A stretch of 63,293 nucleotides of DNA, filler included, from Octopus bimaculoides (GCF_001194135.2; 5 parts of 4 records of this genome joined end to end with filler, not necessarily neighbours in it), one strand, 5' to 3'. Shown: positions 13,955 to 14,749, numbered from the whole stretch's first letter. Notes: generated by a model not told the origin, from the sequence alone. Translations and numbers: made by a program.

Positions 13955-14085
13955 GTGGAAGCACAAGGTCTAGTGATTAGAGCAGCGGACTCGCGGTGGA
14001 GGGATCGTGTCTTCGAATCTCACACCGAGCGATGTGTGTGTGTTTATGAATGAAACACCTAAGCTTCACGCGGCTCCGGCAGAAG
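13955..14085 (+). mobile_element. SINE family C 5' head (tRNA-like), fused to an 18S fragment
   Basis: gtggaagcacaaggtctagtgattagagcagcggactcgcggtggagggatcgtgtcttcgaatctcacaccgagcg...ggctccggcagaag aligns with the reverse complement of 52970-53098. Confidence 0.85.
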
Positions 14086-14640
14086 TGTGGTTGCGGCATC
14101 GGTTGCGGAGCGGCGGCGGTGACCCGGTCGGCNNNNNNNNNNNNNNNNNNNNNNNNNNNNNNNNNGGTGGCAGCACGCCGTCACGTCCGGGCCACTCGGT
14201 TGGCGAACGCAGCGCTTCTTAGAGGGACGGGCGGCAGAAAGCCGCAATAGGCGGAGCGATAGCAGGTCTGTGATGCCCTTAGATGTCCGAGGCCGCACTC
14301 GCGCTACACTGGAGGTATCAGCGGGCGCGTCTCCCCCGGCTCGAGAAGGTCGGGAAACCTCTGAACCACCTCCCGTGATAGGGATCGGGGCCTGGAACCA
14401 ACCCCGTGAACGAGGAATTCCTGGTAGGCGCGGGTCATCAGCTCGCGTCGATCACGTCCCTGCCCTTTGTATACACCGCCCGTCGCTACTACCGATCGAA
14501 CGGTCCGATGAGGTCCTCGGATCTGGCCGACGTGTCCGCTACGCGCGGCGGCGTTCCGCGCCGTCACCGGCACGTTCTCTGATGGCCCGGAGAAGACGAC
14601 CGAACCCGATCGCTTTGAGGAAGTAAAAGTCGTAACATTA
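14086..14640 (+). pseudogene. 18S rRNA pseudogene fragment (V7 to 3' end, helix 45 missing)
   Basis: Universal SSU motifs cttcttagagggac, caggtctgtgatgcccttagatgtc, ccctgccctttgtatacaccgcccgtcgctactaccgat and aagtaaaagtcgtaaca. GC-rich expanded V7/V9; substitutions at normally invariant sites; 33-N gap at 14133-14165. Confidence 0.93.
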
Positions 14641-14749
14641 TTATTTCTCTTTATCACAGGTTTTGTTGGAGGTCCTGATGGCGAAGAAACGATTATAGCA
14701 TGATGCACATAAAACGTGCTGTTGGATATATTCCCTCGTATTAATATCA

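What the first reader, a model, noticed from the sequence alone, without database searches (positions are those of the whole stretch)
13955..14650. tRNA-SINE head fused to the 3' end of 18S rRNA: chimeric retrocopy
Seen: the first 131 nt of SINE family C, with A/B-box-like motifs and homology to 52810-53098, run straight into GC-rich sequence at 14086. After a 33-N gap this is unmistakably the 3' part of 18S, diverged at normally invariant positions (tgtatacacc, gatagcagg, gcactcgcg). Established: LINE reverse transcriptases make chimeric retrocopies by template switching, and SINEs derived from 5S and 28S rRNA are known. Inference: either a one-off template-switch product or a member of an 18S-derived composite SINE with a Pol III promoter in front of rRNA sequence. 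I found no target-site duplication.
Basis: partly seen in the sequence, partly recalled or inferred. Interest (0 to 1): 0.78.

Follow-up and report, generated by a model that had tools for sequence, protein, structure and literature searches.

The report
Lone decayed SINE-head/18S rRNA chimera
A dead, roughly single-copy fragment of the host's own 18S ribosomal RNA sits fused to the front third of a common SINE; it is real DNA, but it is a one-off piece of genomic debris, not a new 18S-based mobile-element family.

Summary
Positions 14087-14637 are the 3' quarter of eukaryotic 18S rRNA (Rfam 246.7 bits, E 2.5e-72). They run from the V7 expansion to about 35 nt before the 3' end. Positions 13955-14086 are the first ~131 nt of a SINE present at roughly 1,000-1,500 copies.

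- **Gap:** both sides match the host's rDNA and appear colinear. About 17 nt are missing, not 33. I could not show a read crossing the gap.
- **Is it real?** Assembled public contigs and a word index showed neither junction nor the locus's own variants, which looked like an assembly artefact. Raw reads overturned that. Two reads from two samples span the SINE|18S junction, four span the 18S|downstream junction, and about six match the variant-dense interior at 98% or better. These counts fit 1-3 copies.
- **Family?** All other SINE copies continue with normal SINE body, and all rDNA copies have normal 18S upstream. There is no family.
- **State:** this copy's A and B boxes are mutated. The 18S part has decayed 4-7%. 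There is no target-site duplication, no tail, and no RNA read on either junction.

Most likely (~0.45) a reverse transcriptase switched templates once and the product was patched into the chromosome. A SINE insertion, a nearby 18S pseudogene and a later deletion remain a serious rival (~0.3). Interest is low.

The parts
13890..13953 (+). Fragment of another interspersed repeat ('X', about 1,300-6,000 copies). Its homology stops at 13953, directly in front of the SINE head. Other copies continue AGATGCAGTGGACTCATAGTTGAGTGCTTG. It may be a third component of the chimera, or the element the SINE inserted into.
   Evidence: Depth and the loose end at 13953 in about 140-158 contigs per run. A single-copy contig covers 13946-14064 with 0 differences and so spans this boundary. 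The missing continuation is not found elsewhere in the piece.
13955..14086 (+). First ~131 nt of a tRNA-type SINE ('family C'), truncated at its 3' side. It is 90% identical to the read-derived family consensus. The A box (13966-13976) and B box (14010-14019) are both mutated in this copy. Base 14086 (T) belongs clearly to neither partner.
   Evidence: Depth of about 1,000-1,500 copies and majority letters. Normal continuation after 14085 in all other copies. Consensus A and B boxes compared with this copy. 90.1% identity over 131 nt. No tRNA model match.
14087..14132 (+). 18S rRNA, V7 expansion, left of the gap. It has 2 differences in 46 nt from the host rDNA.
   Evidence: rDNA-depth contigs cover exactly 14087-14132 and have true 18S sequence upstream. 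One raw read in X21 and one in X22 cover the whole of 14063-14110, across the 14086/14087 junction, at 99% or better.
14133..14165 (.). Assembly gap (33 N). By comparison with the host rDNA about 17 nt of V7 are missing.
   Evidence: Loose-end consensus of rDNA contigs behind 14132. Its overlap with 14166-14178 is 11/13. This is indirect; no read across the gap could be shown.
14166..14637 (+). 18S rRNA pseudogene body, from V7 through helix 44 to ...GTCGTAACA. It lacks about the last 35 nt of 18S. It has decayed 4-7% from the host rDNA, mostly G/C to A/T changes.
   Evidence: Rfam alignment. Differences from the rDNA majority. Raw reads at 98% or better over the variant-dense zone 14246-14343: about 4 in X21, 1 in X22, 1 in X23. 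Four reads in X22 span 14614-14661.
14638..14680 (-). About 40-nt end of another repeat ('Y', roughly 1,300-2,400 copies). In other copies an (ATT)n run precedes it. I infer it is the 3' end plus short (AAT)n tail of a minus-strand retroposon, and it abuts the 18S end.
   Evidence: Depth, plus loose ends before 14636-14640 and behind 14670-14677. The strand assignment is an inference from the tail motif.

Best explanation
What it is (well supported): a real, roughly single-copy, neutrally decaying piece of the host's own 18S rRNA, about 535 nt, running from the GC-rich V7 expansion to about 35 nt before the 3' end. It is joined in the same orientation, with at most one extra base, to the first ~131 nt of a SINE present at about 1,000-1,500 copies.

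How it arose (inferred): a single RNA-templated event. A LINE reverse transcriptase was copying 18S rRNA from an internal start. It stalled in the structured V7 expansion, switched to a SINE transcript and ran to that RNA's 5' end. The composite cDNA was then sealed into the chromosome, next to the (AAT)n tail of an older retroposon. No target-site duplication or tail was made, which resembles endonuclease-independent, break-repair-type LINE insertions.

What it does now: nothing. The Pol III boxes are mutated, it never amplified, and I found no reads from it in the one RNA run sampled.
For: Shown:
- The 18S identity and its extent.
- The left side of the gap is host V7.
- Raw reads support both junctions and the interior: 2 reads over 14063-14110 from two samples, 4 reads over 14614-14661, and about 6 reads at 98% or better over 14246-14343. 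About 0.5 reads per run are expected for a single-copy junction.
- The SINE lacks its 3' part but appears complete at its 5' end. Repeat X's homology ends at 13953, SINE homology is seen from 13960 or earlier, and the consensus A box sits at +12, the usual distance from a Pol III start. Ordinary retroposition truncates the 5' end instead, so this is the opposite pattern and is what a template-switch acceptor should show.
- The parts abut directly, in the same orientation, with 0-1 filler base.
- The decay is mostly G/C to A/T: 11 of 14 listed differences, 6 of them in CpG.

From the literature:
- LINE-made chimeras of cellular RNAs are established, including tripartite ones (PMC2104539).
- 28S rRNA/LINE-1 chimeras have been described (bioRxiv 10.1101/2025.02.02.635956).
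Against: - There is no target-site duplication, and no poly(A) or (AAT)n tail on the + strand after 14637.
- The 18S part starts and ends internally, so nothing marks it as RNA-derived rather than DNA-derived.
- The 5' partner is 3'-truncated. In classical chimeric retrogenes the 5' partner is a full-length small RNA.
- No LINE sequence is part of the unit. The only LINE fragment nearby (12256-12760) is on the opposite strand.
- With a single locus and no empty orthologous site, one event cannot be told apart from several.
- Continuity across the gap is only indirectly supported.
Confidence: 0.45

Rival explanations
1. Several ordinary events followed by a deletion. A full SINE C inserted into repeat X. 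An 18S pseudogene, retro-derived or an rDNA orphon, lay downstream in the same orientation. One later deletion removed the SINE's 3' half, the rest of X and the 5' part of the 18S copy, and so joined them.
For: The region is a patchwork of truncated repeats: SINE A 3' end, X, C, Y and a LINE fragment. There is no target-site duplication or tail around the unit. Other 18S-like pieces exist at single-copy depth elsewhere in the genome, so such pseudogenes are not rare. The remainder of X and of SINE C is absent from the 7 kb downstream, as a deletion would leave it.
Against: It needs an 18S pseudogene to lie close by in the same orientation, plus a deletion whose ends give a clean join. It does not explain why both X and SINE C keep only their 5' ends. 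The 18S|Y boundary at 14637/14638 needs a further event.
Confidence: 0.3
2. DNA-level capture. A fragment of rDNA (not rRNA) was inserted as filler during end-joining repair of a break that had also truncated a resident SINE copy.
For: There is no tail and no target-site duplication, and both 18S ends are internal. Dispersed rDNA-derived fragments are documented in the human genome (PMC5381670).
Against: The SINE is cut at its 3' side and appears to begin at its own 5' end directly after another truncated repeat. That pattern is more typical of cDNA copying than of a random break. No spacer (ITS/ETS) sequence is present that would prove a DNA origin.
Confidence: 0.14
3. A member of a transposing composite SINE family with an 18S-derived body driven by the SINE's Pol III promoter.
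For: The head's family consensus has canonical A and B boxes. No run of four or more T occurs between the head and 14661, so a Pol III transcript could in principle have covered the whole unit. Counts of matching raw reads are slightly above single-copy expectation.
Against: In three contig sets and in raw reads, every other SINE copy continues with normal SINE body and every rDNA-depth contig has normal 18S upstream. Junction-spanning reads number 1, 1 and 0 in three runs. The boxes are mutated in this copy. There is no LINE-type tail and no target-site duplication. No RNA read lies on either junction.
Confidence: 0.04
4. An assembly or gap-closing artefact that joined a SINE-ending contig to rDNA-like reads.
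For: No Logan contig in X1-X4 spans 14086/14087 or 14637/14638, or carries the window's own 18S variants. No run in the word index holds the junction words. No run holds more than 42% of the words of 14166-14455. An unclosed gap lies inside the unit.
Against: Raw reads from independent 2026 samples match both junctions at 99% or better over 48 nt with no loose ends. They also match the variant-dense interior at 98% or better. The contig-level absence has technical explanations. The tool warns that contigs drop rare variants, and a ~50x path beside ~22,000x rDNA is likely to be removed. It also silently drops contigs that resemble human DNA, which any contig reaching 14456-14498 would.
Confidence: 0.03

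Closest known systems
Chimeric retrogenes made by LINE reverse-transcriptase template switching: U6/L1-type chimeras, tripartite chimeras in Magnaporthe (PMC2104539), and 28S rRNA/LINE-1 chimeras in primates (bioRxiv 10.1101/2025.02.02.635956)
   Same: Two unrelated cellular or retroposon RNAs are fused head-to-tail in the same orientation with a clean junction. The 5' partner appears to begin at its own 5' end. An rRNA fragment of a few hundred nt is one partner.
   Different: There is no shared target-site duplication, no 3' tail and no LINE 3' part. The 5' partner is 3'-truncated rather than full length. The rRNA is 18S and forms the 3' component. The host is not a mammal or a fungus.
rRNA-derived SINEs: SINE28 (28S-derived, PMC4994717) and SINE3/5S-derived SINEs (listed in PMC10946416)
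   Same: rRNA sequence occurs in combination with retroposon parts.
   Different: Those are amplified families with a working promoter and tail. This is one locus with mutated Pol III boxes and no tail. The review's table of rDNA pieces inside transposable elements, where I read it, lists 5S- and 28S-derived elements.
Dispersed rDNA/rRNA pseudogenes ('orphons'; human survey PMC5381670)
   Same: A decayed fragment of an rRNA gene lies outside the rDNA array, is flanked by unique sequence and repeats, and has changed at normally invariant positions.
   Different: Here the fragment is joined precisely to a SINE head. The human cases include near full-length rDNA units with spacers, which points to DNA-level origins.
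Endonuclease-independent LINE insertions at DNA breaks
   Same: No target-site duplication, missing 3' ends or tails, and occasional capture of extra cDNA pieces.
   Different: No LINE sequence is present in the insert, and the repair context cannot be reconstructed without an empty site.

Membership tests
Template-switch chimeric retrocopy | Two or more unrelated RNA-derived parts fused directly in the same orientation | tested here: met
   SINE head 13955-14085/6 and 18S 14087-14637 are both on the + strand with 0-1 filler base. Raw reads span the junction.
Template-switch chimeric retrocopy | The 5' partner reaches the 5' end of its RNA (classically a full-length small RNA) | tested here: inconclusive
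   The 5' end is consistent. Repeat X's homology ends at 13953, SINE homology is seen from 13960 or earlier, and the consensus A box sits at +12. However, the partner lacks everything after nt ~131.
Template-switch chimeric retrocopy | One target-site duplication flanking the whole chimera | tested here: not met
   The longest shared word between 13880-13975 and 14600-14760 is 6 nt, while shuffles give a mode of 7. Decay could have erased a short duplication.
Template-switch chimeric retrocopy | 3' poly(A) or LINE-type tail at the 3' end of the unit | tested here: not met
   18S stops at ...GTCGTAACA and is followed by TTATTATTTCTC, which belongs to repeat Y and has the opposite-strand tail type.
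Amplified rRNA-derived or composite SINE family | Many genomic copies sharing the same head/body junction | tested here: not met
   No contig continues from the SINE into 18S, or the reverse. Junction-spanning raw reads number 1, 1 and 0, about single-copy. Copies more than 5% diverged at the junction would have been missed.
Amplified rRNA-derived or composite SINE family | Intact internal Pol III promoter (A and B boxes) | tested here: not met
   The family consensus has TGGCCTAGTGG and GGTTCGAATC. This copy has AGGTCTAGTGA and TCTTCGAATC.
Amplified rRNA-derived or composite SINE family | Transcribed | tested here: inconclusive
   0 reads on either junction in one RNA-seq run, of which only 6% was read. 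No small-RNA or Pol III-specific data were examined.
rRNA pseudogene outside the rDNA array | Significant homology to the host's own rRNA, flanked by non-rDNA sequence | tested here: met
   Rfam 246.7 bits. 14087-14132 differs from the host rDNA at 2 of 46 positions. Flanks are at single-copy depth with exact contigs over 13946-14064 and 14646-14810.
rRNA pseudogene outside the rDNA array | Substitutions at positions conserved in functional copies | tested here: met
   14 listed differences in 336 nt, including 14262 and 14299 in universally conserved motifs. 11 of 14 are G/C to A/T.
tRNA-derived SINE (the head only) | A and B boxes at tRNA-like spacing, plus high copy number | tested here: met
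   The consensus boxes are 34 nt apart. Copy number is about 1,000-1,500.
tRNA-derived SINE (the head only) | Recognisable tRNA cloverleaf or parent tRNA | tested here: not met
   ARAGORN finds nothing, even when relaxed and on the consensus. Rfam gives no tRNA match at E of 10 or below.

The most novel reading that the evidence does not exclude
The locus could be the fossil of a multi-jump event, with repeat X head + SINE C head + 18S copied in one run of a reverse transcriptase. Alternatively it could be the founder, or a rare member, of a low-copy and now diverged SINE-head/18S element that my 95%-identity junction test could not see. Either would be the first documented use of 18S rRNA as the body of a Pol III-headed retroposon. 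It would also be direct evidence for serial template jumping by the LINE enzymes of this (probably molluscan) lineage.
Probability: 0.07. Interest if true: 0.6.

Novelty: new member of a known kind. Interest (0 to 1): 0.2.

Why it matters
It matters little on its own. It adds one example, from a non-mammalian animal genome, of an rRNA fragment fused to a retroposon head. That kind of debris is already known from LINE template switching and from break repair.

It would matter if the same junction turned up at several loci or in related species, because no 18S-derived SINE turned up in the papers I read. My data argue against that.

There is a practical lesson. Contig-level public data (Logan contigs and the word index) gave a false impression that this rDNA-like single-copy locus was an assembly artefact, and only raw reads corrected it. 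Low-copy rRNA pseudogenes are likely to be systematically invisible in such resources.

Tried and rejected
1. Assembly artefact. I took this seriously: no contig over either junction, none with the locus's own variants, and no run in the index with more than 42% of its words. I rejected it after raw reads matched both junctions and the interior.
2. 18S-SINE family. Rejected, because all other SINE copies and all rDNA copies have their normal neighbours at the junction.
3. Target-site duplication search. Nothing above chance.
4. Search within the piece for the missing halves of X, SINE C and Y, and for upstream 18S. Only noise, scores of 21 or below. No second copy of any of these elements lies in the piece.
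5. tRNA identification of the head by ARAGORN (default and relaxed, on this copy and on the consensus) and by Rfam at E of 10 or below. No match. Only the promoter boxes of the consensus are tRNA-like.
6. Direct read-through of the gap. Rows backed by only one or two raw reads appeared not to be displayed in any case.
7. Looking up a window ORF that spans the 3' junction in public assemblies, to fetch an ungapped copy of the locus. Not on record.
8. An index control on the 3' junction failed because too few sampled words were found.
9. Pfam on the ORFs in the 18S part and in the upstream region. Nothing meaningful. The ORFs inside the 18S part are chance frames in GC-rich rRNA sequence.
10. 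Microhomology-guided switching. An 8-nt CACGCGGC is shared by the SINE (14067-14074) and the true 18S just upstream of the junction. It is 12 nt away from the junction on the SINE side, so it does not explain the join.
11. Literature search for octopus or cephalopod 18S pseudogenes. Nothing relevant.

Full report
**The sequence as written.** Reading 13700-15000 shows an AT-rich context interrupted by a GC-rich block at about 14070-14640 (GC 0.58-0.63). Rfam's eukaryotic SSU model matches at 246.7 bits, E 2.5e-72 (162 bits in the whole-piece scan). The aligned part starts in the V7 insert region and runs through the conserved core to ...AAGUCGUAACA at 14637. The last ~35 positions of 18S (AGGUUUCCGUAGG...) are not there. 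Instead the sequence continues TTATTATTTCTCTTTATCACAGG.

**The gap, tested first.** Public DNA runs of the same organism (coded organism A) were laid on the locus. Contigs at rDNA depth (about 22,000 in X1 against about 45-60 for single copy) cover exactly 14087-14132 with two differences, 14098 and 14124. Upstream they continue ...GTTGGTCTGGGATGGCGGTTCGCACGCGGC, and downstream TCGGCCCGCGCGAGCCCGGCGGCGGCACGC. The last 13 letters of the downstream overhang align 11/13 with the first 13 letters after the gap. This places the two sides colinear on 18S with about 17 nt missing rather than 33. The overlap alone is statistically weak in such GC-rich sequence (126 of 1000 shuffles score as well somewhere). 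Continuity is therefore probable but not proven.

**Is the locus real?** At first the evidence said no.
- In three contig sets from different samples, every SINE contig leaves the window at 14085/14086, and every 18S contig enters at 14087 with true 18S upstream.
- No contig at 97% or better carries the window's own variants in 14166-14455. Three zones had zero depth.
- No contig crosses 14637/14638.
- The 31-mer index lists no run for the junction words.
- No run holds more than 42% of the words of 14166-14455. That is the same share as in other species, so these are only the words identical to true 18S.

Both flanks, in contrast, are reproduced exactly at single-copy depth (13946-14064 and 14646-14810). 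This pattern fits a gap-closing artefact.

Raw reads from 2026 runs reversed the conclusion.
- At 98% identity or better, reads cover the variant-dense zone 14246-14343: about 4 in X21, 1 in X22 and 1 in X23.
- On a 48-nt stretch centred on the SINE|18S junction (14063-14110), exactly one read in X21 and one in X22 match end to end at 99% or better with no loose ends. The stretch is too short on either side for a one-sided match to be laid.
- The same test on 14614-14661 gives four reads in X22.

About 0.7x of the genome was sampled per run, assuming a genome of about 2.7 Gb, which I did not verify. About 0.5 spanning reads per run are then expected for a single-copy site, so the counts fit 1-3 copies. 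The contig-level absence has technical explanations that the tool itself warns of. Contigs drop rare variants, and here a ~50x path runs beside ~22,000x rDNA. Contigs resembling human DNA are also silently removed, and any contig reaching 14456-14498 would be.

**The SINE head.**
- Copy number: 13955-14085 is repeated at about 55,000-77,000 word depth, roughly 1,000-1,500 copies at 90% or better.
- Normal continuation: other copies continue GTAATGGCGAACTTCTGCTGACTCTTTCGC after 14085, so this copy lacks its whole 3' part.
- Promoter boxes: replacing the window's letters with the majority letters among genomic copies gives a consensus to which this copy is 90% identical. That consensus has a canonical A box (TGGCCTAGTGG, nt 12-22) and B box (GGTTCGAATC, nt 56-65). 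In the window both are hit: AGGTCTAGTGA and TCTTCGAATC.
- tRNA origin: neither ARAGORN nor Rfam recognises a tRNA in the copy or the consensus. 'tRNA-type' therefore rests on the promoter boxes only.
- 5' end: the A box at +12 and the end of the preceding repeat's homology at 13953 are consistent with the head starting at its RNA 5' end near 13955.

**Neighbours.** The unit sits in a patchwork of truncated repeats.
- A 5'-truncated 3' end of a hyper-abundant SINE lies at 13716-13802.
- Repeat X lies at 13890-13953. Other copies continue differently after 13953.
- Repeat Y lies at 14638-14680. In other copies an (ATT)n run precedes it, so it is probably the 3' end and (AAT)n tail of a minus-strand retroposon.
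- A decayed LINE ORF2 fragment lies on the minus strand at 12256-12760. It matches human L1 ORF2p residues 439-551 at E about 1e-9.
- None of the missing halves of X, C or Y is in the piece.
- No target-site duplication brackets the unit, and there is no + strand tail.

**State of the 18S part.** Against the rDNA majority there are 14 listed differences in 336 comparable nt (4.2%). The figure is at most 7.1% if all the unlisted table rows fall here. Ten are transitions, 11 are G/C to A/T and 6 are in CpG. This is ordinary neutral decay in an AT-rich genome. Other single-copy-depth contigs carry different 18S-like sequences, so 18S pseudogenes are not unique to this locus.

**How it most likely arose.** What is shown is a same-strand, direct join of a SINE piece to an internal 18S fragment, at about one copy per genome. 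The SINE piece appears 5'-complete and is 3'-truncated.

What is inferred is the origin. The truncation polarity of the SINE, and perhaps of X in front of it, is the reverse of what ordinary retroposition gives. It is what is expected if a reverse transcriptase moving 3' to 5' along 18S rRNA stalled in the GC-rich V7 expansion, jumped onto a SINE transcript and ran to its 5' end. LINE-made chimeras, including tripartite ones and rRNA-containing ones, are documented (PMC2104539; bioRxiv 10.1101/2025.02.02.635956).

The lack of a target-site duplication and tail does not fit the classical endonuclease-dependent version. It fits better an endonuclease-independent, break-repair-type insertion; this comparison is from my own knowledge and was not read here. 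I put this at about 0.45.

The main rival (about 0.3) is a SINE inserted into X, an 18S pseudogene nearby, and one deletion joining them. DNA-level capture of an rDNA fragment gets about 0.14. The family reading and the artefact reading are each at or below 0.04.

**Function.** None is expected. The Pol III boxes are mutated and the copy never amplified. One RNA-seq run, sampled at 6%, has no read on either junction. In principle a Pol III transcript could once have run from the head to the first T4 at 14661, but nothing shows that it did.

**Comparison with what is known.** It works like a chimeric retropseudogene, but it fails two of that class's defining tests (shared target-site duplication and tail). 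I therefore file it as an rRNA pseudogene fragment fused to a SINE head, probably of template-switch origin. It is not a SINE in its own right. Known rRNA-derived SINEs are 5S- or 28S-derived and amplified (PMC4994717, PMC10946416), and this is neither.

**Host.** From memory, the very abundant SINE ending ...GGGACTGAACCCGGAACCATGTGGTTGG..., the (AAT)n-rich AT-rich genome and the GC-rich 18S expansions look cephalopod-like. That is unverified.

**Verdict.** Interest is low.

Noticed in passing
window 12256-12760 (minus strand), probably extending to about 13500: Decayed non-LTR retrotransposon ORF2 fragment with in-frame stops. It matches human LINE-1 ORF2p residues 439-551 (E 1.5e-9 to 4.5e-9) but has no Pfam hit. 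The edge of the piece cuts it off.
   Followed up: partly
window 13716-13802: 3' end of an extremely abundant SINE (word depth 1e6-1e7, by far the most abundant repeat in the stretch laid). It is 5'-truncated near 13738; other copies continue upstream with AGTGGGACTGAACCCGGAACCATGTGGTTGG.
   Followed up: no
window 13890-13953: Repeat X (about 1,300-6,000 copies) is also cut at its 3' side, exactly where the SINE head begins. Other copies go on AGATGCAGTGGACTCATAGTTGAGTGCTTG. Two successive head-only fragments suggest serial template jumps, but this was not tested.
   Followed up: partly
window 14067-14074, and the host 18S just upstream of 14087: The 8-mer CACGCGGC occurs in the SINE 12 nt before the junction, and it is also the last 8 nt of true 18S before the junction (loose ends). 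It is not positioned to explain the join. It may be coincidence, or homology that helped bring the templates together.
   Followed up: partly
window 14638-14680: About 40-nt piece of a repeat (roughly 1,300-2,400 copies) that other loci share, with an (ATT)n run in front and several different continuations behind. This looks like a 3' tail module shared by several retroposon families on the minus strand.
   Followed up: no
window 14821-14916 (minus strand): A second tRNA-like SINE head. ARAGORN calls a 96-nt tRNA-Thr-like fold only at the relaxed threshold. The adjoining repeat at 14779-14820 has about 50-150 times single-copy depth.
   Followed up: no
window 17462-17890 and 17989-18458: Two tandem copies (85-95% identical) of an element of about 430 nt, each ending in an (AAT)n tail. 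This shows the tail type used by retroposons in this genome.
   Followed up: no
window 15699-16240 and 18458-18630: Long (AGT)n/(AAT)n and (AAT)n/(ATT)n microsatellites. They generate the long artefactual ORFs and the many inverted-repeat hits.
   Followed up: no
elsewhere in the host genome (contigs matching window 14092-14132, 14178-14246, 14300-14440 and 14588-14627): Several contigs at single-copy depth carry other, differently decayed 18S-like pieces. They include a 204-nt contig reading TCGGCCCGCACAAACCCGGCGACGGCACGC after 14132, and 658-1356-nt contigs with only a 40-nt match to 14588-14627. The genome seems to hold a population of 18S pseudogene fragments.
   Followed up: partly
method note: Logan contigs and the 31-mer index did not show this rDNA-like single-copy locus, although raw reads contain it. 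Negative contig evidence near rRNA-like sequence should not be trusted.
   Followed up: yes
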